Assembly (NCBI RefSeq): GCF_001194135.2
Contig: NC_068983.1
Location: 135,441,859-135,476,661, forward strand
Direction of reading: 5' to 3'
DNA: 34,803 bases
Source: Octopus bimaculoides
Taxonomy: Eukaryota
In this document: piece after piece, positions 3,734 through 24,452 of the stretch
Layout of the letters: each line of letters opens with the position of its first letter
How positions within the stretch are numbered: position 1 is the stretch's first letter
The notes under the pieces: model-generated
Told to the model about the DNA's origin: nothing
Seen by the model: only the letters and a program-made list of their open reading frames with translations
Database searches by the model: none
Made by a program: the position numbers and the translations under genes

Positions 3734-4476
3734 AGATTTCTCTTTGTTGGTGGGGGCCATCTCCCAGAGAGCCTCAGATGATTTCTGACTGTCAACATTA
3801 CAATCTTCCACTAGCTGGTGGTAATACTGAGTAATTCCTAAATGGGTTTGTGGCACTGATGAAGTTCCAGTGATGTCCATAGAATGTGGATAAGACTTAC
3901 TGTTATTAAGTCTTTCATCAGTAACATAATGAATGACAACTTTTTGGTTATTATTAAAAGAACGATAAACATGTTTTAGCAGACAAGTTTCAATCTCATT
4001 AACTAACATTCGAAAAGTACTTTGACGCAGAGCAGGGCTCTGATTCAAGATTAAATCATTTGATCCTAAACTTAACCAAGAGTAGCCATCTTTAGTCCAG
4101 TCACTGGATTCCTGTGAAGGATCAATTTTCATGAGGTAAATTTCTCCCCGAATTGGCTCACAAGGAGGTTGACTTGAAAAAACTTCATCTGGAAGCATTA
4201 ATAAATCCATAACTTCTTTTGTTTCAAGAAATTTGTGAACTGCTTTTCGGTAAGATTCAGATCCAACATTTGTGAGAGGCTGACATCTTTGTTGCAATTC
4301 AGAATTGCAAACAGACAAAGCAAATAATGTATCATCAGAGCTGGAATCCAATTTTCTTTTGCGTTTTGTCTTACCGCGGACAGAACCAGCTTGGAAATCC
4401 TTTGCACGATCACGACCAAGTCGAAGAGTTGGAGCCCAATCGGGGTTTGCTGTTTCATATAGAGTGGCAGATTTTC
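3734..4476 (-). CDS. Coding exon 2 (743 nt, phase 1 to phase 0) of a THAP-domain gene: THAP C-terminus, basic NLS-like stretch, CG-1-like domain
   Basis: Acceptor attctattttatAG at 4478-4477 and donor TCT|GTAAGT at 3733. The frame is open throughout: (G)KSATLYETANPDWAPTLRLG...KTKRKRKLDSSSDD...FLETKEVMDLL...PPCEPIRGEIYL...WTKDGYSW...KHVYRSFNNNQKVVIHYV...NKEKS. It is in frame with track ORF 3725..4351. Confidence 0.85.
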
Positions 4477-4699
4477 CTATAAAATAGAATACAAGGAACT
4501 CTAATAAGTAAATAGGATTCTTTTACCACCAAAATTGGTGCAAAGAGGGATAATAATATAACTACAAAAAAAAGTTTGGTAAGGAAATGGTTAAGGTGTT
4601 TCAGATGAAAGATGCCATTTGTATGATTATTATATTTAAGTTTTGAGTAGGATTTGGCAGAATCTGCCATTGACAACAAATTTAAAATATCCTTTTTCA

Positions 4700-5150
4700 A
4701 TGTCAAGTTTCATCTACTGATCGGGTAACCATGTATCTCCTCTACAGCAAGACACCTGTTTCTGTCTCTCTGTCACTAACCTTTCATCATCAGGCATAAG
4801 ATCACCTCCAATGCTACATCTCTTCTCAAAGGATCTTTAGCTTGCAAGTTACTTGGTGGCCCTGTCAGTACTGGTGCCATGTAAAAAGCATCTAGTCCAC
4901 ACTATAAAGTGGTTGGCATTTGGAAGGGCATCTAGCTGTAAAAAAACCATGCCAAAACTGATCTTGCCTGTGCTGGTGCCATGTAAAAAGCATCCAGTCC
5001 ACTCTGCAGAGTGATTGGTGTTAAGGGCATCCAACCATAAAAACCATACAAAAGACAGCAAAGCATGGTGCAGTCTTCTGCCTAGCCAGCTCCTGTCAAA
5101 CTGTCCAACCCATGCCAGCATGGGAAGTGGATGTTAAATGATGATGATGC
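4700..5150 (+). repeat. (ATG)n-tailed repeat with extended 5' segment (RTE-LINE 3' UTR-like)
   Basis: Contains an internally duplicated ggtgccatgtaaaaagca...agggcatc block and ends ccagcatgggaagtggatgttaaatgatgatgatg. It is the reverse complement homolog of 13675-14150. Confidence 0.75.
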
Positions 5151-8150
5151 CATAAGGTGGATCCTTTACTGAACTGCCTTTTTGGTTTCCGTTGTATCAG
5201 TCATATAAGTAATATCTTATTTACTTACTTTTTTTAGAGGCAGTTATAAGGAAAGTGGTGAAACACCCAAGTCAGTCCTCTTCAAACATTTTATTATGTA
5301 TCTAATTAGAGTATATCATTCAACATCTTTACTTCACCTAGCAGTTGGAAATAGTCATCAGGACTTCTAAGACAGTTATTTACCATGGAATTCACTGGGA
5401 GATTTCTCTCATCTGCTTAATGCTGCTAAATTTAAAGTTAATTACTGACTCAATGTACTCCAAAGATTTAAGTATAGACTAATTATTTATGGAGAGACGG
5501 GAGATAAAACTACAAGTTAATGCTTTCTCTCTACTTTTTCCCTTTTTATTTCTTGTTCATCTTTTCAAAGTAAAACATGGATGCTAAAATTCTTATTCTT
5601 ATTTCATAATTGTTAACCTTGATTTCTGCTTTTCTACATATTTTCAATGACTAAAGAATTGTGCTGCAACAAATCTTTAATTCCCATACCTACTATTGGA
5701 ATTCCCTCTAATGTTTAACTTAGTAATTGTAATGATTATTTCCCTTGATTTATCTTGCAACTGTATGTTGGCAAAGGAGCCCAAAATCTGAAGTTACAGA
5801 TTCAAATACTACTAGACTTAACTTTCATTACATAGAATTCGTGAATAGCAGATCAAATGAAAAGGAGACACAGTGTTTCAGATATCTCAAATGAGAAGAG
5901 GTGTAATGTAACATTTTTGTGGCTCACAAATTTCACTTCAAATTGCGTCAAAGTAACCTCATTAATTTCTCAATAGATGAATATTAAAAAGCCATTTTCA
6001 TTATTATAACACAGAGATTTATATGATTGTTATATCATAATAGAATTTGAACCTATGCTCTCTAGGTTAACACACGATCATTTTAAACACTTAGCAAATA
6101 CATCTTTAATGTCTGGCAACTTTTCTTTGGTTCACATAATCAGAGAATATGTGGTGTTCAATTCCAAGCATGTGTGATTTTTCAGTAGCTCCTTGCTGTG
6201 CTGTTTATCTTTAATAGTGTTGAGTGAACTGGAATCAGTGGTCTTTAGAACTTACCATGACAGTTTACCACAATTTTCAGTAGAAGTGAAGTGAGGTGAA
6301 GGGATGATGCCAGCATGTGAAATATGGAAGATACTGGGCAGCAATATGAAGGGCAAATTACTAGGATTGGATGGACTGTCCCATGGATAAAAGCTTACAA
6401 GAGGAACACAGTGGATAATTTTAGACCAATCACTGGTTCACGTCAATGAAACAGAGATTGCCCATTGGAATTCTATATGAGCCACAAATATCCAGTGACA
6501 TTATTGATTACAGATGCATGCAATAAGAAATTATTGTTACTACTAAGAGGTAAACAAACAAGTGGATAAGGAAATTGATCCTAAGTTCCAAGTCATGATT
6601 TTATATTCTACTGTAGGCCAGATACTTAATTTTACGAGTCTAAGGTTTCATAGCAGTGTAAGAAATTACAACAATTATTACTACTACAACAGTGAAAATA
6701 ACATAATAAAGCAACAAAGCTGTACATAAACTTTGCCTTTCATAACAATAATATAAAAACTTGTAATATATTAATTTTCAATTTAGCCAACTATAATTCC
6801 TCTTTTATTAAATTATGCTCCTGCCTAAGCAAAAATGAATTTTTTAATATTGCTTCAGTTCAATGTACTGAACTCAGAGAAATAGTAAGGTGTTTATTTT
6901 ATTGTCTGCCCTCACTATCTTCCAAACTTGAAATTCCACCATAGTAAATATTACCTTTTCAGTCTCAATTACTGAAGTATCAGTAATATAATGTTTTCTG
7001 CTGAAATGACTATAATCTCTCCCTATAAATACTGGTAATGTACTAAGTCATATTTATTTGATCAATGAACTTTCCATATGTAACTCTCTATCTTCAGTTG
7101 TGTCTCTAATGTCAGTGGGAAAAAACATGAATGGAATATCACAAAATCTCAGTTCATTTTCTCCACAAATCTGAGGCTTTGTGCTATAGTGGAAATAATT
7201 GCTATTCCTGTGGCTGGTGCCATGCAAATTGCTTCTGCAACAATTTTTTCTTTTTTAATTTCACATCGAACTGTTTCATTTTACTGTTTACAACTTACTT
7301 CCTCTTTCACCTTAAAACTGACAGTTATCTGCATAATAGAGAACATTATCATCTTTACTACTGCTGTTGCAACTACTACTACTACAACTACTGGTGTTGG
7401 CTAATGTTACATTAATGATGGAAACTAGGACGTCTGACTGAAATGAGAAAACATAAAGTAGAACTAAAACTGGGAAGTAAACATTTAATTTGAATTACAC
7501 AAAATGATGGTGGGCATGACAAAAAATTTTACTTATAAAATGAGGAAGGAAAACAAATACAAAAAAAATTCCAAAGTAACTCAGAGCACCTCAGAATTAT
7601 TCTCAGTCCCAACCTAAAACAATGACAAAGCAACTTTTCACAATAATATAAGAGAGTGACTATAATCCAAATAAATTATTGTAAGACATGGTAGGAAATC
7701 AATTTTCCACTGTGTAATATTTAGAAAAACAAGATTTTATGGTGGGTACAAAAGGGAGTCTTTCTACACACTGTATAGTTCTTCCTCTTAGTTGTTGCTG
7801 TTATTCACCATCATCATCATCATCATCATTTAACGTCCACTTTTCCATGCATGCATCAAGCAGAATTTGTTGAGGTAGATTTTCTACAGCCAGATGCCCT
7901 TCATGTTTCCAAGTAATATATATATCATCAGTAAATCATAAATATGAAAAAAAAGCACACTCTAAGTTATAGAGCAGTAGAGTATATAAATAAAGATATA
8001 GAATCCTGGCTGCCGAACATAGGGGAAAAATTATGTAGGGTCAACAATGTTAAATGATGATGAGATATGGCTGGTTTATGGGGTTACCCAGGGTTTCACG
8101 TCCATAAAGTAACCCCATAAACTGGCCGTGTCTGTCTGTCTATCTATATA

Positions 8151-9046
8151 TCAGGTCATCCTATAAGTTCTGTCCAAATTTTGAATAAAGAAAACAAGTG
8201 ATCAAATGCTATATTTAATTGAAATTTAATCATCAATGTATTTTCCCTGATTATCTATGACTTGCTTCCATCTATTTACATACTTTTTAATCCCACCAAT
8301 GTAAAACTCTTTTGGTTTCAAAGCGAAGAACTCTGACATGTCAGTTTCAACCTCCTCCTGGTTTGCGAAAGTTATGTCCCCAAATGATTCTGTAAACTAT
8401 GAAACAAATGGTAGTCTGAAGGAGCAAGGTCGGGAGAATAAGGTGGATGAGGAATTTTTTCCCAACCAAGCTCTTCGATCTTCTGTGATGTGATCTTTGC
8501 AGTGTGGGGCCGCGCATTGTCCTGATGAAACATTACACCTTTTCGATTCACTAAAGCAGGTCTTTTTTTCTTCAAAGCTTGGTTCAAACATTCTAATTGC
8601 TGACAGTAGACTTGAGCATTGATTGTTGGATTAGGTGATAACCATTCAAAGTGAATTACTCTTTTGCAATCCCACCAGATAGAGAGAAAAACTTTTTTCC
8701 ATGAAGTTCCCTTCTCGGTTGTGGTTGAGCTTTTCCCCTTTTACCAAGCCACTGTTTACAACGTTTAACATTTCAATAAAAGATCCATTTTTCGTCACCA
8801 GTCACAAGTCTGCCTAAAAGGGGTGAAATGAGTTCGCGAGAATGGAGAGAAGAGCAGATGTCAACTTTTTTTTGTGGTTGCTTTTGGACAATTCATGAGG
8901 CACCCATTTTCCAAGTTTAGGAACCTTTCCAAGTTGTTGAAGATGACGACGAACAGTTGTATGGTTTTGAACTAAGCTTTATTGCCAATTCTTCAACTGA
9001 TAATGCAGGATTTTCTTCAACTAATGCCTCAAGGAGCTTATCATCA
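8151..9046 (-). mobile_element. mariner (D,D34D) transposon relic with frameshifts and stops, running into an assembly gap
   Basis: TA|TCAGGTCATCCTATAAG terminus at 8149-8167. Minus-strand translation contains LGKWVPHEL, LVTGDEKWIFY, HQDNARPH, HPPYSPDLAPSDYHLFHSLQNHL and, after a frameshift, RWKQVIDNQGKYIDD*. Confidence 0.95.
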
Positions 9047-9447
9047 NNNNNNNNNNNNNNNNNNNNNNNNNNNNNNNNNNNNNNNNNNNNNNNNNNNNNN
9101 NNNNNNNNNNNNNNNNNNNNNNNNNNNNNNNNNNNNNNNNNNNNNNNNNNNNNNNNNNNNNNNNNNNNNNNNNNNNNNNNNNNNNNNNNNNNNNNNNNNN
9201 NNNNNNNNNNNNNNNNNNNNNNNNNNNNNNNNNNNNNNNNNNNNNNNNNNNNNNNNNNNNNNNNNNNNNNNNNNNNNNNNNNNNNNNNNNNNNNNNNNNN
9301 NNNNNNNNNNNNNNNNNNNNNNNNNNNNNNNNNNNNNNNNNNNNNNNNNNNNNNNNNNNNNNNNNNNNNNNNNNNNNNNNNNNNNNNNNNNNNNNNNNNN
9401 NNNNNNNNNNNNNNNNNNNNNNNNNNNNNNNNNNNNNNNNNNNNNNN
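9047..9447. other. Assembly gap (401 N)
   Basis: Run of N. Confidence 1.
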
Positions 9448-9449
9448 GT

Positions 9450-9950
9450 TAACAGCACCATCTGAGCAAGATCACTGCCAGAGCAACGGTCTCGCTTCTG
9501 TGCCGGTGGCACATAAAAAGCACCATTTGAGCGCGATCGTTTCCACCTTCACCTTACTGGCACTTGTGCCAGTGGCATGTGAACAAAACATTGGACTGAC
9601 TCCTGTGCAGGTGGCACGTAACAAACACCATTTGAGTGTGGCTGTTGCCAGTACTGCTGGACTGGCCCTCAAGCCAGTGACACGTAAAAAGCCCCCAGTA
9701 CACTCTCGGAGTGGTTGGCGTTAGGAAGGGCATCCAGTTGTAGAAACTCTGCCAGATCAGATTGGAGTCTGGTGTAGCCATCTTGTGCGCCAGTCCCCAT
9801 TCAAATCATCCAACCCATGCTAGCATGGAAAGCGGACATTAAATGATGATGATTAAACATTCTAAAATACTATTTTAAAAAAGGTAAAATCAGACAGAAC
9901 TTATGGGATGACCATGGAAAGCGGATGTTAAATGATGATGATGATGATGA
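9450..9950 (+). repeat. (ATG)n-tailed repeat with internal ~100-bp tandem units and a duplicated tail
   Basis: Repeated ggtggcac.taa.aa.caccattt(c/g)agcg units, then the core ctctcggagtggttggcgttaggaagggcatccag. Tails end at ~9853 and ~9952. Confidence 0.85.
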
Positions 9951-10330
9951 TGATAATTTGTTGAAAATTTACCTCAACAAAATCTGAGGCTGTAGCAGAA
10001 GACACTTGCTGAAGGACTCATGCAGTGAGACTGAACCTGAAACCCTGAGGTTGGGAAGCCCAGCCATGTCTGTTTTATCCACACAGCATGCTGTATACCT
10101 CACCACACACACAAAAATAATTTTTTACACCAAACATACTCTTTGTCCTTAAATAAGCCGAAAAAGATCAATAACTAATCTTTTTCTATGTATCAATAAT
10201 TTAGATATTATATGTTTAAATCCTGCTCAAAACATCTTATGAAAACTAAAAAGTTCAAAGTTAGTCTCAGAGCCTAAAGGGTCTTAATCAGTTAAGTTAG
10301 GATTAGGGTTAGGGTTCCTTCAAATTTTAA

Positions 10331-10550
10331 CCCTTTTATTACCATACTTCTGTTGAGATGCTCTATGTTTCTTTCAATTAATTTTAAATATAACAAAGAA
10401 TTTAGTAAAATAACTTAGTTATCATTGAGCTAGTGTTAGGAACATCAATAGTGACTAAGGTTTGGTGGAAGATTTTAATTCAGAACTTTTGAAAACAAGA
10501 CATTTGTACCAGAGCCAGAGACGGTTTCAGGTGGGTTGATATCAAAAGGC
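10331..10550. mobile_element. piggyBac-type MITE (TTAA-flanked, 220 bp)
   Basis: TTAA (10327-10330)|CCCTTTTATTAC ... GATATCAAAAGGC|TTAA (10551-10554), with imperfect TIRs. Confidence 0.5.
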
Positions 10551-10926
10551 TTAAACAATATTATTGATTCCTAGCTGCCTTCTAAAACCAGTTTCACTGA
10601 ACCTTTCTCCAATTTAGTTTATATGCTTATCTAGATAGATGTTAAGAAACTAATTCTTTTTCATTTCCAGTAGATCGTCTGCATTTACTGCATATCACCC
10701 AATCCATGCCTCTCACATAGTCTCTCTTTGTGCTAAATGAAATTAAATTCAGCCTATATAAACATAGCTTAGTTGCAATGTGAAAGAGTTTCTGTGCCAG
10801 AACTCTAGGGATGTAATTATGTTATGGATGCTGAACCAAATATTCTTCATCAGTCTTGGGTCACAGAAACTTTCACAGTAAGAAAAAAATCATAATTTCA
10901 TTAACCAGAATCCTTAATCTTTGTAC

Positions 10927-10965
10927 ATATATATATATATATATATGTATGTATATATATATATA
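10927..10965. repeat. (TA)n microsatellite
   Basis: Direct reading. Other microsatellites lie at ~11049-11074 (CT)n, 23167-23198 (AT)n, ~27868-27930 (TA/TG)n, 29109-29138 (AT)n and ~33376-33411 (ATT)n. Confidence 0.95.
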
Positions 10966-11536
10966 ACTACTGCGAGTAGTAAGTTTATTTAAGTGACCTA
11001 GTTAGTTAGACAATGCTGGTAGTGAGTAGTGAAGTTATGTGACTTGGAGTCTCTCTCTCTCTCTCTCTCTCTCTGACTTTCTCTCTCCCTCACAAACTGT
11101 TAGATGTATCTGAAGTGTCACATAATACTGTACTGCTGTAAAAGATAGATCAGTAAAGGTTAGACAAGGGATAAATACTTTGAGTCATTGAATTGGGAGA
11201 GTATATCATAATTGTTTATGAATTGATGTTCCGCCCTACACACCAACAGATAATCAGGCACTCCTGTTGGTTCACTTGAGAACTTAACATTTTATTAAAA
11301 GGTCTCTCAAACAGTACTTTTAATACTTATTCTTTCTTAGTGTAGTATTAGTAGTAGTAGCAGCAACAGCAGCAGCACAAATATAAACATTCGATGCAAG
11401 TACACAGACAAAAACAAACTTACTCATGTAAGGCAAAATGCATATGATAAACAATGCAATATAATACATATACATAGATGTGCAGTCACTAATTTATCCA
11501 TAATTGAAAAAATATAAACACATACATAGAAATATA

Positions 11537-11958
11537 GGTGCAGGCATGACTGTGGTTAAGAAGTTTGCATCCCACCCACATAGTTTCAGGTTCAGTCCTG
11601 TTCTATGGTACCTTGGGCAAGTGTCTTCTGCTATAGCCCTGGGCGGACCAAAGCCTTGTGAGTGGATTTAGTAGAGGGAAACTGAAAGAAGACCCTTGTG
11701 CGTGTGTGTGTGTGTGCATGCGCGCATGTGATTGTGTTTCCTCTTTTTACATAGTTGTAAATGAATGTCAGTCATACAAGGGATGTCATTCATTTCCAAT
11801 GTCCTGTGAAAATATGTCTGGCCATAGAAAAATATTACTTTATTTGAAAACAGATGAGGCTAGGCAACACGAGGCGCATGCAGCCATAGAAAATCTACCA
11901 CAATAGACTCTGTCTGAGCCATACAAGCAAGGAATAGTGGACATCAAAATGATGATGA
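11537..11958 (+). mobile_element. Near full-length tRNA-derived SINE with (ATG)n tail
   Basis: A-box-like ggcatgactgtggttaag, B-box-like ggttcagtcc (11589-11598), core ttgggcaagtgtcttctgctatagcc, a (TG)n middle and the tail ggacatcaaaatgatgatga. Related fragments lie at ~7805-7915, ~9975-10070, ~15680-15760, ~16590-16690, ~16940-17040 and ~34420-34600. Confidence 0.75.
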
Positions 11959-12019
11959 AATGATTTATATCTATGATGAACTCTACTGTTTAGAACAAAA
12001 TATGAGCATTCAGTTGTTT

Positions 12020-12390
12020 GATCAAATAAACAACCTACTCACTGAATTAGTATGCAAACTATATGGAACATACACCAACCAGCTCAGAAAGATACAGAAC
12101 ATCAGTTGGAGATCACACTCAACACTTAGTAACATCTACAGAAATCTGATATCAATATCCCTCAAGCTAAAGCAGAAATGGCTACAATTTGATGGCCACT
12201 GTCATCGAGCAGAGAAAGAGGTTATCTCATCCCTGCTCCTATGGTATTCCTATGGAAGTGTTTTCTCCAGGAAACTGGCATTTTCAAATACTATATTTTG
12301 GGACTCAAGGCTAGATATTAAAGATCTGAACACAGCAATGCAGGACCATGTAGTATGGGATTGTCAATGGCATTCCGACCAAGCATAGGT
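12020..12390 (+). mobile_element. RTE-clade LINE ORF C-terminal relic
   Basis: LYGTYTNQLRKIQNISWRSHSTL..IY.NL..IS..LKQKWLQFDGHCHRA...SLLLW...AMQDHVVW matches the RTE post-RT region (L.GTYTRLLR..N.SW..H...RRL.F.GHC.R...W). Confidence 0.7.
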
Positions 12391-13236
12391 TGATTGAAGG
12401 ATGATGATAAGTATGCAAAATGGCTGAGTATCCCACAGACATGCAGATTTCATTAGCTTTTGTTCCTTTTGGGATTTGGCAAGCAATAGACTGCTCTGGA
12501 ATATCTTTCCAATGCAACCATAAGACTCAAGGAAACAAATTTAGCTTCTTTCCAAACCCTAATATCATAGTAGACTGCCCTCTGCTCCACAGTGAGTTTG
12601 TGTTCACTGTTATTTACAGATACTGTTCACATTATATGAAGTGTCTTAAAATTTCTGTAGCTAGACTTTTGCCTTCAGTGTAGTTAGGTCAAGGGAGATC
12701 ATATTTTTGAAATCCTTGACCATTTATGCCTTTGAGCTTGTCAATGAAATCTACATGATAGATTTCATTCTGTTTTCATACTGAGGTGCATCTGTTGAGC
12801 TTGATGCTTGAAATCTTTGACAAAGTCATCATGATACTTGAGCCAAAGCTGAAACAAGATTGGCTGGTTCATAATGTTCTAACAGGATGGTGAAAGGAAA
12901 GATAGGATGGTTGAAATACAGAAACTTTTATGTTGCATTCCATCGTGACCATTCTCCAGCAATCTAAATATAAACATGTTTCTCTGTGGATGATCTAAAT
13001 TTTGCCAGGTACTTTTCATCAATCTTGAAATGAACTTGAACCTCACACTTTAAAGAGAAGGGATTTTGAACAATGCATTCATTGTTTATGGTATACTCCC
13101 TTCCAATGGTGCAATAAAAAAAGGGTACCTTACTTTTTTTGTCTCCATTGCATCTTGTTCCTGATGGTACAGCAATGTTTTTGCAAAGCTATCATACTTG
13201 CAGAGCTTAAATCTATAAGTGTATTGTCCCTTAGAC

Positions 13237-13502
13237 CAGGGGTTTTCAAACTTTTTGACTTGCGGACCCCTTTATATTTCAGACTTTACCTTATAAACGC
13301 TTACGAAATTTATACATAAATATTTGCTTAAAATAACATATATTTTTACATTTATTTATTTAACAGTATTTAACAAATAGGTTTATTGCCAATTAAAAGA
13401 TTTCGATTAAAAAACACATATAAAGTCAAATTGCCCATAAAAAGTATTTGCTGTCCACGGACCCCCTGTCTTATCGTTGCGGACACAGTTTGAAAACCCC
13501 TG
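13237..13502. mobile_element. hAT-superfamily MITE, 266 bp, perfect 16-bp TIRs and 8-bp TSD
   Basis: TIR CAGGGGTTTTCAAACT / AGTTTGAAAACCCCTG. TSD CCTTAGAC at 13229-13236 and 13503-13510. Confidence 0.92.
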
Positions 13503-13674
13503 CCTTAGACAATGCTTGCTGTACAGCAGTCATTTGAGTGAAGTAAACCTGGCCATTTTCCAAGTGGACAGCAAGTTGTTGAATCCTGATACACCTTCAA
13601 GTAGGGAAGACAAAAAAGTACCAGAAAGCCTCATTGTTGCTAATCCCTTGATGGAATTCACCATAATTCCTCTT

Positions 13675-14150
13675 CTTCATCGTTGAATGTCCACCTTCCA
13701 TGCTAGCATGGGTGGGATGGTGTCACGAGAGCCGGCCAGGCAGAAGCCTGCACCAGATTTCTGTGACTGTTTTGGTAGGATTTCTACAGCTGGATGCTCT
13801 TCCTAACACCAACCACTCAGCAGAGTGGACTTAGTGCTTTTTACATGGCACAAGCACAGATGAGATCAGTTTTGGCAAGATTTTTATAGCTGGATGCCCT
13901 TCCGAACACCAACCACTTTACAGTGTGGACTGGGTGCTTTTAAGTGGCACTTGCACTGAAAGAGTCATCAAGTACTTGCAAGAAAAAAAAAAAAACTTTC
14001 AAGAGAGAAGGAGGCATTGGAGGAGGTGATCTTGTGTTGGATGATGAAAGGTTATAGGTGTCTTGCTGTAGAGGAAGTATAAGGTTACCTGACTGAAGGG
14101 AGAGAGAGATCAGGAATGAAGACAGAAACAGGTGCACTACCACAAAGGAA
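13675..14150 (-). repeat. (ATG)n-tail family repeat, extended form, reverse orientation
   Basis: Reverse complement similarity to 4700-5150, including the gcattggaggaggtgatctt / aagatcacctccaatgc segment and a duplicated ctggatgc.cttcc.aacaccaaccact block. Confidence 0.75.
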
Positions 14151-14331
14151 ATACACAGTTACCCAACCTCAAGGAAATGCAGGAGAAGGAGATTATTATT
14201 AATACTTCTTTTTGACACAGTTGAGCTTGAAATCTGTGAGTTCTTTAGTCATATACTCATAATATACAAACAAAAATTTAACTATTACTACTCCTGCTAC
14301 TTTACCATTAATAACAATAATCTTAATAATA

Positions 14332-14582
14332 TCAGGTCATCTCATAAGTTCTGTCCGAATTTTGAATAAAGAAAACAAGTGATCAAATGTTATATTTAAT
14401 TGAAATTTAATGATCAATGTACCTTCCCTGATTATCTATGACTTCCTTCCATCTATTTACAAGCTTTTTAATCCCATTAATGTAAAACTCTTTTGGTTTC
14501 AAAGCGAAGAACTCTGAAATGTCAGTTTCGACCTCCTCCTGGCTTGCGAAAATTATGTCCCCCCAAATGATTCTGTAAACTA
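14332..14582 (-). mobile_element. Second, 5'-truncated copy of the mariner at 8151 (TIR plus transposase C-terminus)
   Basis: TA|TCAGGTCATCTCATAAGTTCTGTCC...gattctgtaaac is colinear with, and highly similar to, 8151-~8400. Confidence 0.9.
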
Positions 14583-14589
14583 CCTTTAA

Positions 14590-14810
14590 CCCTTTAGCAT
14601 TTGGATTATTCTGTTAAATATAATGCTTATTTATTCACATTATTTTGAATTAATCATGCATTATCTTGTAGCTTTCAGATTTCAGCAACGTTACTGTTTA
14701 TATTTAGAATGACAAATGCTGGGTAGATGTGAGAGGCTGGATCTGGCCAGTTTGAACATAAAATAGGAAGAATATTTGGGCCAGATACAGCTGGATTAAA
14801 TGCTAATGAG
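14590..14810. mobile_element. piggyBac-type MITE (TTAA-flanked, 221 bp)
   Basis: TTAA (14586-14589)|CCCTTTAGCATT ... AATGCTAATGAG|TTAA (14811-14814). The 12-bp TIRs have 2 mismatches. Confidence 0.7.
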
Positions 14811-16699
14811 TTAATGTATCATGCTTGCCATCATGCAGCTATTAAAGCTAAAGAATAAGGCTGCAGTCATTGAGCAACACACTACTTGGCCAAGTAAATA
14901 GTATGTGTAATGGCACTTATTTAGTTATTCAAAAAATTAGAATGAAAGTTATTAAACGAAAAGAAAGTGTCCTTGGCACAGGAATTATATGTTTATTCCA
15001 ATAGTTGACCTTTCTTCTGAAGGTGACAAGTTTGCATTTACACAAATAAGAAAATGGTACCCAATTAAATAACAACGGTAATGACAATAAGTATATTACA
15101 AAGACAAACATTTTAAAAAAATTGCACTGATTTACCAAAAGTCAGTATCCATACATGGTGAAATATATGTTGCTTATCTAGGGTATCAGAAAGGTTTCTT
15201 TTAGGTTTGGATATATTCATAGTATGAAAAAAAAAAAAAAAAAAAATTTGTGTACAAAGAAGTTTTAAAATAAGAATATATAGTTTTAGTTTAAAACAGC
15301 ATTTTCTGTATGCAGGAAATTAGGTCACAAATTTTAAAATAAACAAAATATTTTTTAAAGATAAACTTAATACACACACATACACACATCCATCCAGCAA
15401 CAGCTGCTACTACTATCAATTTAAACTTCCATTTTTCCATATTTGTATGGGTCAGGTGAAATTTATCAAGGCAAATTTTCAATGAGTAGAGACCTTCCTG
15501 TCACTAACATTCACCTGTTTCTAAACAAGGTAATATTTTACCAAGGCTGGACATGTTTTCATAAAAGATTGGAAGTAAATGACACTGCTTGTATGACAGT
15601 GATGCTTGCTTATAACTTTAATCCAATGTCAAGATAAGGATTCACAAATACACATATATATACATATAAGTATATGACAAGCTTCTTTCAGTTTCCATCA
15701 ATCAAATTCAATCACAAGGCTTTGGTTAGCCCAAAGCCTTCTAGTAGCAGAAGCCTGAACTACAAAGGGCTTGTCCCACAGAGAATGTTTCCGGTTACTT
15801 TTGGGTACCTCCTTGTATAAACCATTTGTGAGGCAGTTGTACACTTGCTGGTCTTTAAATGCCAAACTGTTGCTGTATATGTTTCTGATGCAATAGAAGT
15901 GTTTGGATTTGACAGTACCTCCCATTCCTTTTGTATTTCTCTCTTTTATGCCAAAGGTTGAAACAAGAGTTTTGTAAATATTCCCCATATCTATCATACT
16001 ATATTATTCCAGTTTCAAAGAGTAAACATGTAACTTATTCCCAGCAATTAAGGTCTTTGATTTTACAAAAAGCATTCACCAAAGAAATTTAAAGTAATTT
16101 CTACAGCCGATAAGTAAAACCTCGGCTGTTAAGAGACAGAGCTGAGCAGTAGTCCAACCAATTCAACCGAAATATAGAATTCCCAGAGTGGAAAGAAAAA
16201 GGAGGCTGAACTAGAAAGAAGAAATATGAGAGTTAAGAAAAAAGCAGAAAAAGAAAACAAGGTAGAAACAGCAACAGTGGTTGAGACAGTCAATAGAGAG
16301 AAATCAAAGAATAGAACTTAAGTAGAAAGAGACACAAATAGAATGATAGCTAGATTTAGATATGTTTGGACAACTGATAAATATATAACAGATTGGTTGC
16401 TAGGAACCACAAAACATCATATGACAGGTAAAGCTCACAAGAGACATTAAATCTAAAGGTCAAAGTTCACATGTACTATGGATAAACACTTCAATTTCAA
16501 ATAAGAAACTGACAAGCAGTGCTTGTTGGAAGAGTATGAGTAATGATGACAGTAGAAGGAACTTTTTGACAAAAGACAAAATAGCTGTGTGGTTTTAAGA
16601 AATTTTAAACCAGGATTCTAGGTTTGATCCCATTACACTGCACCTTGAGCTAAACTTCTGAACAGAGTTTGGTAGACAGAAACTTTGCAGAATTGTGTT

Positions 16700-16935
16700 A
16701 TGTATATACACTTTTTTTATCTTTTATTTGTTCCAGTCACCAAACTGTGGCCATGCTGGAGTACTACTTTGATGGATTTAGTCAAACAAATTGACCCCAG
16801 TGTTTATTTTTTTAAAAGCCTGGTACTTATTCTATCAGTTTCTTTTGCTGACCTGCTAAGTTACAAAGATGTAAACAAACCATCACTGGCTGTCAAGTGC
16901 TGCTGGAGGGACAAACACACAGATATATACATTTA
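16700..16935 (-). repeat. SINE-like repeat of a second family (reverse orientation)
   Basis: ctgtggccatgctggag...attgaccccag...ctggtacttattctatc...ttttgctga.c.gctaagttac. Plus-orientation remnants lie near 17870-17960 and 29545-29585. Confidence 0.55.
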
Positions 16936-18402
16936 CACAAACCACAGTCTTCTTTCAGTTTCCATCTACCAAATCCACCCATAAGACTTTGCTTGGCCTA
17001 GGGCTGTAGTAGAGCTGAACACAAGATCACATGGTTACAAAGCTAGCTACAGGAAAATTCATTCTTCTGACTTCCCCGGGAAAAGTGATGTGAGCACAGA
17101 AACAAAATTTTGTCATATGTGAGAATTGTAAAATATTTTCTTTACTATGGTGTGTCAGATATTTCACTGTTTTATTTCTTAACAAGATACTAATGTAGTA
17201 AGCTAAAATCATTGATAAATTACTTATAACTAGTGAGACCTGTGAATATTTCATGGAATTAATGGTAAATTTAATGGGTTATTTCTGAAAACTTTATCCA
17301 AAAAAACCTGAAAGCATAGCCTATGTTGCGTCTGTATGGAAAGATAGTCGCTCATCTGATAGGTGATGTAAAAAAACATAGTTCAATTAAAAAAAAAATA
17401 CCCTTTTCACTATCTAATCACCACCACCACTTCCAACTCCATCTCCACCACCTCTCTCTCTGCCTTTTTTTAACCTCATCATCAGAACATCACCCCTCTG
17501 CTAAAATCATTACATTCCCCCTACCTCACCTCATGGATGCTTCTCTCTCTCTTTTTCTGTCTCACTCTTCGCTTTATCCTCTTTTTCTGTTTCCTTTTTC
17601 TTTCTCTTCAACTAATCATGTGAAAGCATTACAATTACATTCCCTCTACCTCATGTCATGGACATTTCTCTTTCTCTCCCTTTTTCTCTAATCATGTGAA
17701 AGCGTTATGAACGGGCTAAGTAATGTTAGTTAAGATTAGTTAAGGTGCACTCTAGTGTGTTTTATAATCATACACACATGCATGTGTGTATGTTTGTATA
17801 TACCAATGTAAGACAGCACGTATCCCTTTACATCAAAAGGTAACTCAGACACTCAATAAACAAAAACTGATAAAATAAATATTAGGGTGAGTATGATTGA
17901 CCAAAACCATTGAAAGCAAGACTTTAGCTTGGCAACAGTCAAATGGCTGAGTGTAGTAAAAGACTCATCATCATCACTATAGCCTCATCAAAGACTGGCC
18001 TATGAATGTGTTCTGGTCACATTCTTAGCAATAGTATTCTGCTAATTCCTCCTTCAAGTCTTCCTGTAACTGCCATTGTGCTATTTGGTGTGCAAGAAAT
18101 ACTTTTTTTTTTACGTCAGTAAAGAAGACATTGCAAGTGAGATGTGTTGATTGTCTCAAACAACTAGAACATACAGCAAGTTTAAAGAGAAAGTTAAGGT
18201 GACAGATAATTATAGTCAACATTATTGATTCTAGTACCTGAACTGGTTAGACAGAAACTAGAGTTATAGAGAAATATGAAATTCTCAGTATGGAATATAA
18301 AATACAAAACTATTAGTTTCATATTTCATTTCACTAATGAAACTAATTTACTAAAGAAATTAAGTGTAGACAAATGACTCGTTAAGAGAACTAGGTGTTG
18401 AC

Positions 18403-18905
18403 CAGGGTTGGCCAACCTGAGGCCCACAGATTTTTTTTTTGTGGCCCACTTGATACTTTCTTGAAATGGGTTTATTTAAACAAACATTTTAAAAATTTTA
18501 TCAAAAATTGAAGATTGTGATGAAAAGTAAAAAAGAACACCATTTTGAGCATGGCCATTGCCAGTACCGCCTGACTGGCCTTCGTGCCGGTGGGATGTAA
18601 AAGCACCCACTACACTCTCGGAGTGGTTGACATTAGGAAGGGAAAATCAGATTGGAGCCTGGTGTAGACATCTGGCTCACCAGTCCTCAGTCAAATTGTC
18701 CAACCCATGCTAGCATGGAAAGTGGACGTTAAATGATGATGATGACTACTGTTTTTGCAACGATAATATTTCATGTTGAATCAACAATCATTCATTCGTT
18801 ATTGTAATAATAGCATGAGAATAAGTCCATAAAGTATACATGCGGCCCTAAAAGACTTTCTGTGATTAAAGTAGCCTGCAATGTAATTCGAGTTGGCTAG
18901 GCCTG
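18403..18905. mobile_element. hAT-type MITE carrying a nested (ATG)n-tailed repeat (~18550-18745)
   Basis: Termini CAGGGTTGGCCAAC / GTTGGCTAGGCCTG. The 8-bp flanks GTGTTGAC (18395-18402) and GTGTAGAC (18906-18913) match at 7/8. Confidence 0.7.
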
Positions 18906-18929
18906 GTGTAGACAAATACCTTGTGAGCT

Positions 18930-20895
18930 GTATAAACTATGTACAAAGGTGTAGTAGGTAAAGCGAGTCAACATTGTGTTTAGTGACAAATTTAGCATAA
19001 TGGCAGGAGTCTATCAAGGCTTAGTCCTCAGTCCTCTCCTCATAGTCCTACTGTTTATCAGAAAGGAGTTTAACATTGGCTGCCATAGGAACTCCCATGT
19101 GCTGATGGTCTAGTTCTCATAACTGAATCTATAGTGAAATTTAGAATCAAGAGGCCTCAAGGTGTTAGAGATATTATTATGTAAGAAAGAAGACAAGACC
19201 TTGGTATTTGCAAGGAAATGGCTTTGCTTCATATGCAGAAAAAGAGTAGGTATAAATTCTATATACTGAACACAATGTAAATTATGGACACACAAAAAAC
19301 GTAGTGGAATCACAGGTAGGCCAGTAAAGAAAGTAAGCTTTGTACGTGGCAGATGCACTGAAGCAATACATATTAGAAGCACACAAAAAATAGATTTACT
19401 TATATGCCAGGTTGTCTCATTAGAAGTGGTTCATAACTCCTGTTATCTAGGAGACATAATTAGCAGGGAAGATAGTTATACAGAAAGTATGTATTGTAGC
19501 CACAGTAAAAATGGTTGGAAAAAGTTCAAGGACTTATTACCACTGCTGGAAATAAAGGCCTTTTACTTCAGAGTAAAGGATAGAATGTGTGACACCTACG
19601 TTAGAACAGCAATGTTACATGATAGCAAAATATAGGCTTAGAATGAAGAAGACTTGTAAAGACTAGAAAGAAATGAAACCAGCATGTTTTGATGGGTATG
19701 AATGTTAGTGTGTATGGACACTAGAGTACAAATAAGCTACATGAAAAACTGGGTATAAGATTGAGTATTGTGTGCAAGAGAGGAGGGTGCACAGGTACAG
19801 GCATGTAATGTATATTGGGGAGATAACAAAGGACTATGCTAGGCTACAAAAGAACCATTCACCCATGACAAAACTGCCTTCTCACTTTATATTCCTCATG
19901 CTGAACTTCATGTATCTATTACTCACTCCCCACTTCATGACTTCCATTTATTCATCACTCCTAGCTCTCTATCTCTTATCTTGCCACAACCTGTACAGAC
20001 TGCATCAGCCACTTTACTTCATTCTGACACCCCTATTCTTCTCTCAGTCAATATATAAGAGACTGCATTGAAAAGTCAGAGACTACCCACCCTATACACT
20101 CTAGCTTCACCTTGCTGTACTACAGCCAGCAGCACTCTCACTCCTCTGGGTTACCTCTATTGTCACTTAACTCCAATTCTTGCCTTTATCTCACCATCTA
20201 CACTTACCTTTGTTCACCCTATCTATTGCCAATAATACTGCTTTACTGACTCTACCCTCTAACATCTCTTTGTCTTTCCCAGTATACTCTTGACCTTTCC
20301 ATTCTTACATCCACTCCAACCCTTCTGATGTCTTGCTCCTCTTCTCTCTCCTATGTTCTTCTTAGACCACTTGAGCAAATGAACACATCCTGGGCTATTA
20401 GATATTCTCTACACTTACAGTCCTATAACCTCCTCTCAATCACCCATTTCTGACCTTTCTGCTGTCATTGCACCCTTTCCTATCTCCTTAGGTTACTGAG
20501 TACTCTAGTGCAGGTGCTATAAGAAAATGCACCCAATACACTCTGCAAAGTAGCTGGTGACAGAAACCAAGCCAAATGACACATACAAGCACCAGTCTTT
20601 AGTAGTAGTGGCTCTCATAAGAAATGATTCAAACAGTGAAGACCACTCAGTCAACCCATACCAGAATGGAAAGAGGACATAAAATGATAATGGGGCTTCG
20701 TGCTGGTGGCACGTAAAAGCACCCACTAGACTCTCGGAGTGGTTGGCGTTAAGAAGGGTATCCAGCTGTAGAAACTCTGCCAAATCAGATTGGAGCCTGG
20801 TGTAGCCATCTGGTTTCACCAGTCCTCAGTCAAATCGTCCAACCCATGCTAGCATGGAAAGTGGACGTTAAACGACGATGATGATGATGATGGTG
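18930..20895 (+). mobile_element. 5'-truncated, decayed RTE-clade LINE: RT core, C-terminus, pyrimidine-rich 3' UTR and (ATG)n tail
   Basis: Broken frames give GVYQGLVLSPLL, (Y)ADGLV, RGLKV..., LEVVHNSCYLGDIIS, WKKFKDLLPLL, YVRTAMLH and VQERR.HRYRHV. A C/T-rich tract follows (19860-20500), then the family core and tail ending ~20893. Confidence 0.8.
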
Positions 20896-22259
20896 AATAA
20901 GCTCCTCTTCTGATATAATAACAAGATATTTTAGTGAAACAGTCAATGCTATACAAGTGAGAAGATTAGATGGATTATAGCTTGATAAGTCAGAGTCCCT
21001 ACTGCAGTTACTGTGACAAATTTGTACATGCCACATTGAACCTTTATTTACATATTGTATGTTACCTGGTAAATAAAGATGTTCTTTATCAAACTATTTA
21101 TTGTTATATCTTACATCACAACAATGGTGTCATTGGCAAGCTCTGAATTGGTACTGACTGATCTTGAACTTGTTGAAACATGGTTAAGATGCATTACAGC
21201 AACCTTGAGAGCAAAGAAATCAAATGATAGTAAGGAGTGTGGTGGTATCAAGGAGATAATTATTAAAGATCAGTAGGTAGGCTACTAGTAAAGTGTTACT
21301 AATGGTTTATCTGAAGTAGCTGATGGATGTGTTTCAATGAATAGAGGAAATGATAGTGTATAATGTGAATCTAAAATAGAAGTTTATCACTGACAGTCAA
21401 AATAGGTTTATATCTCTGTGTCAAAAATCCTTTTAAAGTTTTGGCATCAACTTTGTAACAGGCTTTGATATTGTGAGTCCAGTAAACCTGGTCAAATTGA
21501 ATAAAGAACTGAAGATGATTTAATACAAATGAGACTTATTGAGAGCTTACCTGTATCATATATCTCAAAGATCAAGAATATTGAAATAACTGTATTTGGG
21601 AAATATGTCCTTGACACATGAAATTCACACTACAGGAATTGATATTGCATTCTAAGAATTAATATTTATCATAAAGTAGAGATAGAGTTTCCAATGATTA
21701 TCACTTGAGCAAAATGAATAAATTTTCTCAATACAAATTTTATGGTTATCAACATGCAAAATAAATAAAGAGAAAAATCCTGCATTCGGGAAGATAGATA
21801 AATTGCACGACAAAAAAAAAAAAAAAAAATCTACACTCAAAGTTTTGGAGTGTTAAAAAGGAAAGTAAGGAATATGTTCAGCAAATTGATGATAAAAACT
21901 CTGACACTAAAACAGATGTAGTGACACTACAAGATGAAGAAAAATCTTTCCATCCTAGCTGAAGCTAAAACTGAATAATTTCAGTTTGGATCTGCAAGTA
22001 AATACTTGTAGTTGTTACTTTAATTGTGAGGAACTTTTAAGATAACCAAACTTCTTAAAGGATTTGAACTTGAAATGTAAAAGGCTATAACCAAATACAG
22101 TATTATTGTGTTCCAAGTTCTAACGAGTCTACCTATCCACCGTGTCACTTCTTTTTACAAGTCGGAGCTGTTGACAAATAAATTAACATAAAATGCTTGA
22201 AGAATGAAGGTGGTCTGCAATAATGAAGTTATGTATTTAATCCAACACTCAACATAGAT

Positions 22260-22930
22260 GCCTAGGTGGTCGTTTGACTTTGATCTGCTAGAAATAGAAA
22301 CAAAATCACACCTTACAATCCTAACGTAGTCCCAAGTACCCCTATAAAGTCGGGGTAATTATGGATGAAATTCTTCTGGTAATGGGTCTGTTCGATCATG
22401 GTTAATAAAGAACTACTACAGTAGGAAAAACTAAACAAAAACAAAACGTATAGTTGCAACAAAAAAGTGTCTTTTTGTCCCCCTGTTCATCAAAGATACT
22501 GACAACAATAACTGTAAATTGAGTTAAGTCAACGAAGGAGCCTCTGAGCGATCGTTCAAAGCGATGGAAATAGTAACCAATTTCCCCTCAAATCATACAC
22601 TATTGTCTTACAAAATGACACTTTGGATATGGTCTTGGGTTCCCCGTATATAGGGAAAAGATGGGATAGTCACGGGTGGAATGTTTTTAATCACAGGATT
22701 GTTTGATAAGTGCTATCCAGTGTCTAAACGACAACTTCTATATATCGGACCGTCGAAGAAGCCTCTACATGGTTCCTTACCCTGCTAGAAATAGCAAATC
22801 TCCTTAAATAGTACATCACGGTCTTAAAACAAGGATATTTGGATACTTTCGACAATGTAGTCATTTATAACACACCCCTCTAAAAAGACAGAATAGCCAT
22901 GAATGGAATACTTTGATGATAGGTCTGTGT
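22260..22930 (+). repeat. Three degenerate ~200-250-bp units of an interspersed repeat
   Basis: The motif (c)tgctagaaatag..aaat..cc.t.aaat.a.ac....gtctta.aa recurs at ~22282, ~22565 and ~22779. Confidence 0.55.
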
Positions 22931-23164
22931 AATCAGTGCTGACATAAGATTAAACTAGTATAGATCTTAAAGAATTATGAATGTTTGTTTGTAAACAAAT
23001 AAACGCTTATCGCATTATACAACAAAGCTAGTGTCGTTATTTATTCACGTACGTTGCATTCTGTGTTTATATTTTATGAATTAATCACGACCTGTTTTTT
23101 TGTGTACATTTTTTTTACTTCTTTTGTGTAGTGCTATCTGTTATTAAAACATTCTTTATCGTCT

Positions 23165-23201
<37 letters not shown>

Positions 23202-24232: not shown

Positions 24233-24452
24233 CGGATATGAAATGATCTGAGCACACCCGGACATATGCATAACTGGTCTCTTTTAAATCTGGTCGATTA
24301 ATATTAGCTATCCATTGTTCGCGACGTTTTCGCGATCTTTCTCTAGTTTCTTCTCCTTGGTTAGTGATGATGGCTGGCAAACGGTAAAATGAGTTAGCTC
24401 TATCGCGATCTGCACGACTTGAACAGCCGTTAACAGCACAAAAGTTAACCAT
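24233..24452 (-). CDS. Coding exon 1 of a THAP zinc-finger gene (N-terminal C2CH THAP domain)
   Basis: MVNFCAVNGC...FYRLP...RREQWIANINR...[11 protein letters not shown] carries the THAP signature C-x4-C...W...C-x2-H-F. The phase-1 donor G|GTAAGA is at 24232. Confidence 0.9.

What the first reader, a model, noticed from the sequence alone, without database searches (positions are those of the whole stretch)
3880..4240. THAP fused to a divergent CG-1 (CAMTA-type)-like DNA-binding domain
Seen: after the THAP tail and a KTKRKRK basic stretch, exon 2 encodes FLETKEVMDLL...SSQPPCEPIRGEIYL...DWTKDGYSW...KHVYRSFNNNQKVVIHYV. Established (CAMTA sequence recalled from memory): CG-1 reads NTNEEIAAYL...SPKTRPQNGSMILY...YRKDGYCW...RRCYWLLQNPDIVLVHYL. 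The four blocks match in order and in rough spacing. CG-1 is normally found in CAMTA proteins and has been linked to the WRKY/GCM-like folds associated with Mutator-type transposases. I do not recognise a characterised THAP + CG-1 protein. Inference: a chimeric transcription factor built from two transposon-related DNA-binding modules, possibly lineage-specific. This is the best candidate for an undescribed system in the window.
Basis: partly seen in the sequence, partly recalled or inferred. Interest (0 to 1): 0.8.

Follow-up and report, generated by a model that had tools for sequence, protein, structure and literature searches.

The report
THAP plus CG-1-like transcription factor gene
The window holds the first two coding exons of a cephalopod-type gene. 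It joins a THAP zinc finger of Harbinger-transposase type to a divergent CG-1-like DNA-binding domain whose relatives sit on Mutator-like (MULE) transposases, and related species add a BTB domain, so it looks like a lineage-restricted regulator built from transposon parts.

Summary
On the minus strand, exon 1 (24452-24233) encodes a C2CH THAP core. Exon 2 (4476-3734) encodes the THAP tail, a KTKRKRK basic patch and a ~110-residue domain (about 4243-3926).

That domain matches Pfam CG-1 over nearly the whole profile (2-114 of 116). It scores 18-22 bits, below the curated cut-off of 23.5. Its homologues pass the cut-off: 23 of 24 aligned family members hit CG-1.

A family profile finds only WRKY domains in the PDB. 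A confident AlphaFold model (pLDDT 90) matches NAC and WRKY folds best.

Relatives of the domain sit at the N-terminus of MULE/SWIM transposases in rotifers, crustaceans and other invertebrates. The THAP part is 48-63% identical to THAP-Harbinger transposases. No transposase catalytic domain remains in the window.

A spliced transcript from a related species confirms the exon 1-exon 2 junction and adds a C-terminal BTB domain, which lies outside the window. A second isoform replaces the THAP exon with a ZSWIM3_N/FAR1-like exon.

Exon 2 is under strong purifying selection (dN/dS about 0.05).

This is a domesticated, transposon-derived DNA-binding protein with an undescribed domain combination. 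DNA binding itself is inferred, not shown.

The parts
24233..24452 (-). Coding exon 1. It runs from the start codon ATG (24452) through the THAP C2CH core (MVNFCAVNGC...VCSDHFIS + 1 nt) and ends at the donor CCG|GTAAGA.
   Evidence: Pattern scan and sequence. Pfam THAP 48.9 bits. 83% amino-acid identity to residues 1-75 of the transcript-derived P0035.
4477..24232 (-). Intron 1, about 19.8 kb. It splits the THAP domain between the zinc-binding core and the AVPT-like tail. It contains interspersed repeats, a mariner fragment and an assembly gap.
   Evidence: The junction is confirmed by the spliced transcript L003/P0035, which reads ...DHFISG|KPSTLYE... without interruption. The Harbinger transposase relative P0002 has no intron.
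3734..4476 (-). Coding exon 2. The acceptor is tttatag|GA. It ends at a consensus donor TCT|GTAAGT (GT at 3733-3732). If the donor is not used, the frame stops two codons later (TAA at 3727-3725).
   Evidence: The donor is conserved in the orthologue L001. P0035 continues past the equivalent point into BTB-encoding sequence.
4412..4476 (-). THAP C-terminal tail (KSATLYETANPDWAPTLRLG), with the AVPT-like motif.
   Evidence: The Pfam THAP envelope covers residues 5-91. The tail aligns with Harbinger THAP transposases.
4352..4372 (-). Basic cluster KTKRKRK, a putative nuclear localisation signal.
   Evidence: Sequence. The RKRK core is conserved in P0035. The NLS function is inferred.
3926..4243 (-). 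CG-1-like, WRKY/NAC-type beta-sheet DNA-binding domain (residues ~152-257). The most conserved motif, DWTKDGYSW, lies at 4102-4076.
   Evidence: Pfam CG-1. Family alignment A2. PDB profile hits to WRKY. AF2 model with pLDDT 90. Foldseek hits to NAC and WRKY.
3734..3925 (-). Poorly conserved tail after the CG-1-like domain. In orthologues it is a linker towards the BTB-encoding exons, which lie outside the window.
   Evidence: 35% amino-acid identity to P0035, against 58% for the CG-1-like domain and 81% for THAP.

Best explanation
The region is part of a host gene, not an active transposon. The gene encodes a nuclear, sequence-specific DNA-binding regulator assembled from transposon-derived DNA-binding modules.

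Exon 1 and the start of exon 2 encode a C2CH THAP zinc finger of the type carried by PIF/Harbinger transposases. A basic KTKRKRK patch follows and probably acts as a nuclear localisation signal.

The rest of exon 2 encodes a ~110-residue CG-1-like domain. It is predicted as a helix followed by a five-stranded antiparallel beta-sheet of the WRKY/NAC/GCM type. Its closest relatives are the N-terminal DNA-binding domains of a subfamily of Mutator-like (MULE) transposases. The conserved strand DW-x-KDGY-x-W aligns with the WRKYGQK strand, which WRKY proteins insert into the DNA major groove.

In orthologues the protein continues into a BTB/POZ domain, encoded beyond the left end of the window. That domain would dimerise the protein and could recruit co-repressors or CUL3.

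Shown here: the exon structure, the domain homologies, the predicted fold, purifying selection, the BTB domain and an alternative N-terminal exon in orthologues.

Inferred: DNA binding by each module, nuclear localisation, a dimeric repressor-like mode of action, and the presence of BTB exons in this species.
For: Gene structure:
- Exon 1 and exon 2 have consensus splice sites.
- The junction is reproduced in a 3.5-kb transcript contig, L003/P0035, which is 56% identical overall.

THAP:
- Pfam THAP 48.9 bits against a cut-off of 23.9; spacing C5-X4-C10-X56-C67-X2-H70.
- 48-63% identity to THAP+HTH_Tnp_4+DDE_Tnp_4 proteins from many phyla.

CG-1-like domain:
- The Pfam CG-1 match is full-length but below the cut-off in the window.
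- phmmer found 20 homologues. Most pass the CG-1 cut-off, and 23 of 24 aligned domains hit CG-1.
- MULE and/or SWIM domains lie downstream of the domain in P0040, P0041, P0044 and P0050. P0042 is a multi-copy Rotaria family named 'MULE transposase domain-containing protein'.

Fold:
- The PDB profile search returns only WRKY domains, best E=0.007.
- AF2 model pLDDT 90, pTM 0.83.
- Foldseek top hits are NAC (E=3e-3) and WRKY (E=0.03-0.06, target TM 0.58).

Host-gene status:
- dN/dS=0.05 (4 non-synonymous, 21 synonymous changes) against a 97%-identical orthologue whose flanking introns also align.
- The two domains are better conserved than the linkers: THAP 81% and CG-1-like 58%, against 35-41%.
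- No transposase catalytic remnant is present in the window.
- The transposon version of the THAP gene has no intron.

BTB:
- Pfam BTB in P0035 (35.8 bits), P0037 (30 bits) and P0062.
Against: - The window's own CG-1 score (18-22 bits) is below Pfam's cut-off of 23.5, so membership rests on transitive homology.
- No Foldseek hit reaches E<=0.001. The top structural hits are NAC rather than WRKY or GCM, with TM-scores of only 0.4-0.6.
- The Cys/His zinc ligands of WRKY/GCM1 are not conserved in the family.
- No solved CG-1 structure was found for direct comparison.
- The BTB exons are not in the window. The reading frame would stop two codons after exon 2 if the donor is unused.
- There are no binding or expression data for the source species, and its identity is unknown.
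Confidence: 0.8

Rival explanations
1. The domain is a MULE-transposase N-terminal domain of the WRKY-GCM1 superfamily. On this view it only shares superfamily-level similarity with CG-1: it is a sister family, and 'CG-1-like' overstates a specific relationship to CAMTA.
For: - The window's score is below the CG-1 cut-off.
- The PDB profile hits are WRKY.
- Three of 24 members also hit Pfam WRKY, and one Dreissena member is auto-named 'WRKY domain-containing protein'.
- The family is linked to MULE/SWIM, as classical WRKY-GCM1 domains are.
- No TIG, ANK or IQ domain occurs in any relative.
Against: - CG-1 is the top Pfam family for 23 of 24 members, with near full-length coverage and per-domain E-values down to 9e-11.
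- A Capitella protein with tandem copies scores 136.7 bits and is named 'CG-1 domain-containing protein' by UniProt.
- WRKY matches are far weaker, and the WRKY zinc ligands are absent.
Confidence: 0.2
2. In this species the gene makes only a short THAP + CG-1-like protein of 323 aa. Exon 2 reads through the GTAAGT to the TAA at 3727-3725, and no BTB domain is attached.
For: - An in-frame stop lies two codons after the putative donor and is conserved in the orthologue L001.
- No BTB-like sequence occurs in the 3.7 kb downstream that the window covers.
Against: - The GTAAGT donor is perfect and conserved.
- The orthologue P0035 and the paralogue P0037 splice at the equivalent position into BTB-encoding exons.
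- In Argonauta the downstream exons of the paralogue spread over about 16 kb, more than the window holds.
Confidence: 0.15
3. The region is decaying transposon debris or a pseudogene. On this view, unrelated Harbinger and MULE fragments happen to lie on the same strand and do not form a functional gene.
For: - The window is rich in transposon remnants: mariner fragments and SINE-like repeats.
- Both modules have transposase relatives.
Against: - The ORFs are intact and the splice sites are consensus.
- A spliced transcript in a related species joins the same two exons.
- dN/dS is 0.05.
- The domains are more conserved than the linkers across a deep divergence with saturated synonymous sites.
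- No catalytic-domain remnants are present.
Confidence: 0.04

Closest known systems
CAMTA proteins (calmodulin-binding transcription activators; CG-1 + TIG + ankyrin + IQ)
   Same: The window's domain matches the Pfam CG-1 profile end to end (positions 2-114 of 116). It keeps the block order helix / P-x-x-P-x-G-G-E-x-Y / KDGY-x-W / F-x-K-x-V-Y...V-x-V-H-Y. It is presumably a sequence-specific DNA-binding module.
   Different: Its score is below the curated cut-off. No TIG, ankyrin or IQ domains occur in the window's protein or in its full-length orthologues. The flanking domains are THAP and BTB instead, so no calmodulin link is expected. The closest relatives are transposon-borne.
MULE (Mutator-like) transposases with an N-terminal CG-1-like domain. 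Examples: Rotaria socialis A0A820DWU8 family; Trinorchestia KAF2360161.1; unnamed P0040, P0041 and P0044.
   Same: They carry the same CG-1-like domain family, at 25-33% identity and phmmer E=1e-5 to 1e-7. In these proteins it sits where MULE transposases carry their DNA-binding domain.
   Different: The window's gene has no MULE catalytic domain or SWIM finger. It contains introns, is under purifying selection and is fused to THAP.
FHY3/FAR1 and ZSWIM-type MULE-derived factors (WRKY-GCM1 class DNA-binding domains)
   Same: The same principle applies: a DNA-binding domain from a Mutator-like transposase is reused by the host. An isoform in a related species (P0062) carries a ZSWIM3_N/FAR1-like exon in front of the same CG-1-like exon.
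   Different: FHY3/FAR1 keep the transposase core and the SWIM finger, whereas this gene keeps only DNA-binding modules. The zinc ligands of WRKY-GCM1 are not conserved in the CG-1-like domain.
THAP-bearing PIF/Harbinger transposases (THAP + HTH_Tnp_4 + DDE_Tnp_4)
   Same: The THAP domain and about 40 residues after it are 48-63% identical, including the sequence DHFISGK...PDW.PTL.
   Different: The transposase part is absent. The transposon gene has no intron, whereas here a ~20-kb intron splits the THAP domain.
Octopus THAP genes with BTB/POZ, catalogued by Mukherjee and Moroz 2023 (PMC10027918)
   Same: That catalogue describes cephalopod THAP-family expansions in which THAP is combined with BTB/POZ. 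The full-length orthologue P0035 is THAP ... BTB.
   Different: The paper does not mention a CG-1 or CAMTA-type domain (zero occurrences). The middle DNA-binding module and the alternative ZSWIM3_N exon are not described there. I did not check whether this exact gene is in their list.
WRKY and NAC plant DNA-binding domains
   Same: These are the best sequence-profile hits (WRKY) and structural hits (NAC, WRKY) among solved structures. The conserved DGY-x-W strand aligns with WRKYGQK.
   Different: The matches are weak (E=0.003-0.06, TM 0.4-0.6). There is no zinc site, and there is an extra N-terminal helix and loop.

Membership tests
THAP domain (Pfam PF05485) | Profile score at or above the curated cut-off (23.9 bits) | tested here: met
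   48.9 bits, E=1.1e-12, profile positions 1-86 of 87 on the spliced exon 1 + exon 2 protein.
THAP domain (Pfam PF05485) | C2CH zinc ligands (C-X2-4-C-X35-55-C-X2-H) and a C-terminal AVPT-like motif | tested here: met
   C5-X4-C10-X56-C67-X2-H70 and WAPTLRLG are present. The spacing is slightly long and is shared with the Harbinger relatives. The motif definition comes from general knowledge of THAP.
CG-1 domain (Pfam PF03859) | Profile score at or above the curated cut-off (23.5 bits) | tested here: not met
   The window's protein scores 18.2-21.7 bits (E=2e-3 to 1.8e-4) over profile positions 2-114 of 116.
CG-1 domain (Pfam PF03859) | Homology to sequences that do pass the cut-off (transitive membership) | tested here: met
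   phmmer from the window finds P0034 (E=6e-47), P0036 (8e-22) and P0037 (1e-17). These score 136.7, 33.6 and 33.5 bits on CG-1. 23 of 24 aligned domains hit CG-1.
CAMTA family | CG-1 followed by TIG/IPT, ankyrin repeats and IQ calmodulin-binding motifs | tested here: not met
   Pfam finds only THAP, CG-1 (weak) and BTB in the window's protein and in the full-length orthologues P0035 and P0062.
CAMTA family | Binding to CGCG/CGTG-type motifs | not testable with these tools
   Needs DAP-seq, SELEX or EMSA.
WRKY-GCM1 superfamily | Four- to five-stranded antiparallel beta-sheet DNA-binding fold, with the conserved W-R-K-Y-like strand first | tested here: inconclusive
   The AF2 model has five strands. 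All nine PDB profile hits are WRKY, E=0.007-1.3. Foldseek gives NAC at E=3e-3 and WRKY at E=0.03-0.06, and no hit reaches 1e-3.
WRKY-GCM1 superfamily | Zinc-chelating Cys/His ligands (C-C-H-H/C) | tested here: not met
   No conserved Cys or His columns occur at the corresponding positions in the 24-sequence alignment. Only the His of V-H-Y is common.
MULE transposase | MULE DDE catalytic domain (PF10551), often with a SWIM finger | tested here: not met
   tblastn of the MULE relatives P0040, P0042 and P0044 against the window matches only the CG-1-like segment. Pfam finds no MULE domain in P0035 or P0062.
PIF/Harbinger transposase | HTH_Tnp_4 and DDE_Tnp_4 domains | tested here: not met
   Only residues 1-138 of P0002 find a match in the window.
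BTB/POZ transcription regulators | BTB domain (PF00651) | tested here: inconclusive
   BTB is absent from the window. It is present in the orthologue P0035 (35.8 bits), the isoform P0062 (35.5 bits) and the paralogue P0037 (30 bits). The window ends 3.7 kb downstream of exon 2.

The most novel reading that the evidence does not exclude
The CG-1 domain, so far treated as the hallmark of CAMTA factors, may belong to the WRKY/NAC/GCM beta-sheet class and be spread in animals as the DNA-binding head of a Mutator-like transposon lineage. Cephalopods would then have domesticated one such head, joined it to a Harbinger THAP finger and a BTB domain, and placed alternative first exons in front of it (THAP or ZSWIM3_N/FAR1-like). 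One gene would thus produce regulators with interchangeable transposon-derived DNA-recognition modules.
Probability: 0.4. Interest if true: 0.65.

Novelty: new variant of a known kind. Interest (0 to 1): 0.5.

Why it matters
Transposon-derived transcription factors are a known source of lineage-specific regulators, and cephalopod genomes are rich in them. This gene would add three things.

1. A domain combination (THAP + CG-1-like + BTB) that I could not find described.
2. Direct evidence that CG-1-like domains travel on MULE transposases in invertebrates and resemble WRKY and NAC domains. That bears on the unexplained origin of the CAMTA DNA-binding domain.
3. A possible case of alternative first exons swapping one transposon-derived DNA-binding domain for another.

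All three can be tested with standard binding assays and cDNA sequencing.

Tried and rejected
Searches that found little or nothing:
- Word-indexed protein searches with the C-terminal part found only the near-identical orthologue. The same search with the 24-sequence alignment found only four short proteins. The homologues came from the exhaustive phmmer run.
- tblastn for the BTB-encoding exons of P0035 and P0037 found nothing in the window. tblastn for the ZSWIM3_N-type alternative exon of P0062 also found nothing.
- I looked for a THAP exon or THAP tail in the Argonauta paralogue locus. There is none within 10 kb upstream, and its CG-1-like exon starts directly at an acceptor. THAP therefore appears specific to the window's paralogue.
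- The PDB sequence-profile search found no solved CG-1 domain.
- Literature searches for CG-1 together with transposase, WRKY-GCM1, GCM, AlphaFold/fold or Mutator-like found no paper stating the link.
- Searching for the SRA and assembly accessions did not identify the source species.

Rejected readings:
- The weak Pfam hit to THSD1_D3 (E=0.094) was dismissed as noise.
- Transposon debris or a pseudogene was rejected on selection, splicing and transcript evidence.
- I did not use CAMTA sequences recalled from memory as evidence.

Full report
**Observation.** The finding lies on the minus strand. Translating 3600-4520 in the reverse direction gives one open frame. It reads ...KSATLYETANPDWAPTLRLGRDRAKDFQAGSVRGKTKRKRKLDSSSDD...FLETKEVMDLLMLPDEVFSSQPPCEPIRGEIYLMKIDPSQESSDWTKDGYSWLSLGSNDLILNQSPALRQSTFRMLVNEIETCLLKHVYRSFNNNQKVVIHYVTDE...

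**Gene structure.**
- A scan for the C2CH pattern found the THAP core about 20 kb upstream on the same strand, at 24452-24233 (MVNFCAVNGC...VCSDHFIS), ending at a CCG|GTAAGA donor.
- Exon 2 starts at 4476, behind a polypyrimidine tract and an AG (tttatag|GA).
- The spliced product has a complete THAP domain: Pfam 48.9 bits, cut-off 23.9.
- Exon 2 ends at a perfect donor (TCT|GTAAGT, GT at 3733-3732), two codons before an in-frame TAA.
- A 3.5-kb transcript-like contig from another species (L003, protein P0035, 901 aa) reproduces the exon 1/exon 2 junction exactly. It continues past the end of exon 2 into a long region with a BTB/POZ domain.
- No BTB-like sequence exists in the 3.7 kb that the window holds downstream.
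- In the Argonauta paralogue the downstream exons spread over about 16 kb. The rest of the gene is therefore most likely beyond the left end of the window.

**Is the domain CG-1-like?**
- Pfam CG-1 (PF03859) is the top family for the window's sequence. It scores E=1.2e-3 / 19 bits for exon 2 and E=1.8e-4 / 21.7 bits for the domain alone.
- The match covers positions 2-114 of the 116-position profile, but it is below the curated cut-off of 23.5 bits.
- An exhaustive phmmer search of 1.84 billion representative proteins found 20 homologues.
- These homologues pass the CG-1 cut-off. P0034 is Capitella teleta R7TPW2, named 'CG-1 domain-containing protein', with five or six tandem copies and 136.7 bits. 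P0036 scores 33.6, P0037 33.5, P0039 95.5 and P0052 78.7.
- In a 24-domain alignment (A2), 23 members hit CG-1 at E<=0.01 and three hit WRKY.
- The window's domain is therefore a divergent member of a CG-1-like family. Formal Pfam membership fails for the window's sequence on its own and holds by transitivity.

**Fold.**
- A profile built from A2 and searched against all PDB sequences returned nine hits. All are WRKY domains (best E=0.007). The family's most conserved strand, D-G-Y-x-W, aligns on WRKYGQK.
- No solved CG-1 domain was found.
- AlphaFold2 on A2 gave a confident model (pLDDT 90, pTM 0.83): one helix followed by five beta-strands.
- Foldseek against the PDB ranked NAC domains first (E=3e-3 to 1.4e-2, TM 0.44-0.53). 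WRKY1-C and WRKY33 came next (E=0.03-0.06, target TM 0.58). No hit reached E<=1e-3.
- NAC, WRKY and GCM share a DNA-binding beta-sheet; this is general knowledge and was not tested here.
- Two independent methods therefore point to the same structural class. The evidence is suggestive rather than decisive, and the WRKY zinc ligands are not conserved.

**Transposon connections.**
- The THAP part, including about 40 residues after the domain, is 48-63% identical to THAP+HTH_Tnp_4+DDE_Tnp_4 proteins. These are PIF/Harbinger transposases from priapulids, echinoderms, hemichordates, brachiopods, bivalves and fish. One such gene examined has no intron.
- The CG-1-like domain occurs N-terminal to MULE and/or SWIM domains in P0040, P0041, P0044 and P0050.
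- The P0042 cluster is a multi-copy Rotaria socialis family named 'MULE transposase domain-containing protein'. A Dreissena member is auto-named 'WRKY domain-containing protein'.
- No transposase catalytic sequence is associated with the gene in the window.

**Host-gene status.**
- A 1.6-kb contig from a closely related genome (L001) aligns at about 97% through exon 2 and the flanking introns.
- Within exon 2 there are 21 synonymous and 4 non-synonymous differences, giving dN/dS=0.05.
- Against the distant orthologue P0035 (synonymous sites saturated), THAP is 81% identical and the CG-1-like domain 58%. The linkers are 35-41% identical.
- A paralogue (P0037 from Argonauta hians, P0036) has CG-1-like + BTB but no THAP tail and no THAP exon within 10 kb upstream.
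- A second transcript form in the P0035 lineage (P0062/P0065, L005) replaces the THAP exon with a 218-residue exon matching ZSWIM3_N/FAR1 (60.3 bits). It is 97.6% identical to L003 from exactly the exon 1/exon 2 junction onwards. That exon is not in the window.

**Mechanism (inferred).**
- The protein most likely acts as a nuclear DNA-binding regulator with two recognition modules. One is the THAP zinc finger. The other is the CG-1-like beta-sheet domain, whose DW-x-KDGY-x-W strand would contact the major groove.
- A basic nuclear localisation signal separates the two modules.
- The C-terminal BTB domain would dimerise the protein.
- Likely targets include sequences related to the ends of the parental Harbinger and MULE elements, or CGCG-like motifs. 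None of this was tested.

**Comparison with known families.**
- It is not a CAMTA: there are no TIG, ANK or IQ domains.
- It is not a transposase: there is no DDE domain.
- It is not a canonical WRKY-GCM1 domain: there are no zinc ligands.
- It works like domesticated transposase DNA-binding factors such as FHY3/FAR1 and the THAP proteins.
- Octopus THAP genes with BTB have been listed (PMC10027918), but without any CG-1-type module.
- Open-access literature searches found no statement linking CG-1 with WRKY-GCM1 or with MULE. Such a link may still exist in domain databases or subscription papers that I could not query.

**Verdict.** It is a new variant of a known kind (a transposon-derived transcription factor) and of moderate interest.

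Noticed in passing
window 24803-25198 (+): An intact 131-aa ORF encodes a GSKIP-domain protein (Pfam GSKIP_dom, 116 bits). It lies head-to-head with the THAP exon, with the two start codons about 350 bp apart, which suggests a shared bidirectional promoter.
   Followed up: partly
L005 (P0062/P0065) and P0060, related species: An alternative first exon encodes a ZSWIM3_N/FAR1-like (MULE-type) domain and is spliced to the same exon 2 in place of the THAP exon. The resulting isoform keeps the THAP tail without its zinc-binding core.
   Followed up: partly
window 8378-8999 (-) and 2918-3300 (+): Mariner-type transposase fragments with stops and frameshifts (Pfam Transposase_1, 65 bits for the minus-strand copy). 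One lies in intron 1 and the other just downstream of exon 2.
   Followed up: partly
window 4781-5140, 13690-14050, 33637-33799, 20700-20872, 31275-31426, 18656-18735, 9677-9845, 1659-1711: An interspersed SINE-like repeat occurs in at least eight diverged copies (70-87% identity) on both strands. One copy lies immediately upstream of the exon 2 acceptor region.
   Followed up: partly
window 9047-9447 and 28384-29108: Runs of N (assembly gaps). The first lies inside intron 1. A 19-bp tandem repeat (28153-28234) abuts the second.
   Followed up: no
P0034, P0038, P0039, P0050, P0052 (relatives): Some invertebrate proteins carry two to six tandem CG-1-like domains. The last copy is often followed by a conserved P-H-G-N-x-K ... 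R-T-x-P-S motif, which is also seen in the MULE-linked copies and is absent from the window's protein.
   Followed up: no
L004 5258-6130 (-): Next to the intronless THAP-Harbinger transposase gene lies an ORF with YqaJ/viral alkaline exonuclease domains, and another with a faint PHD hit. This may be part of a larger mobile element.
   Followed up: no
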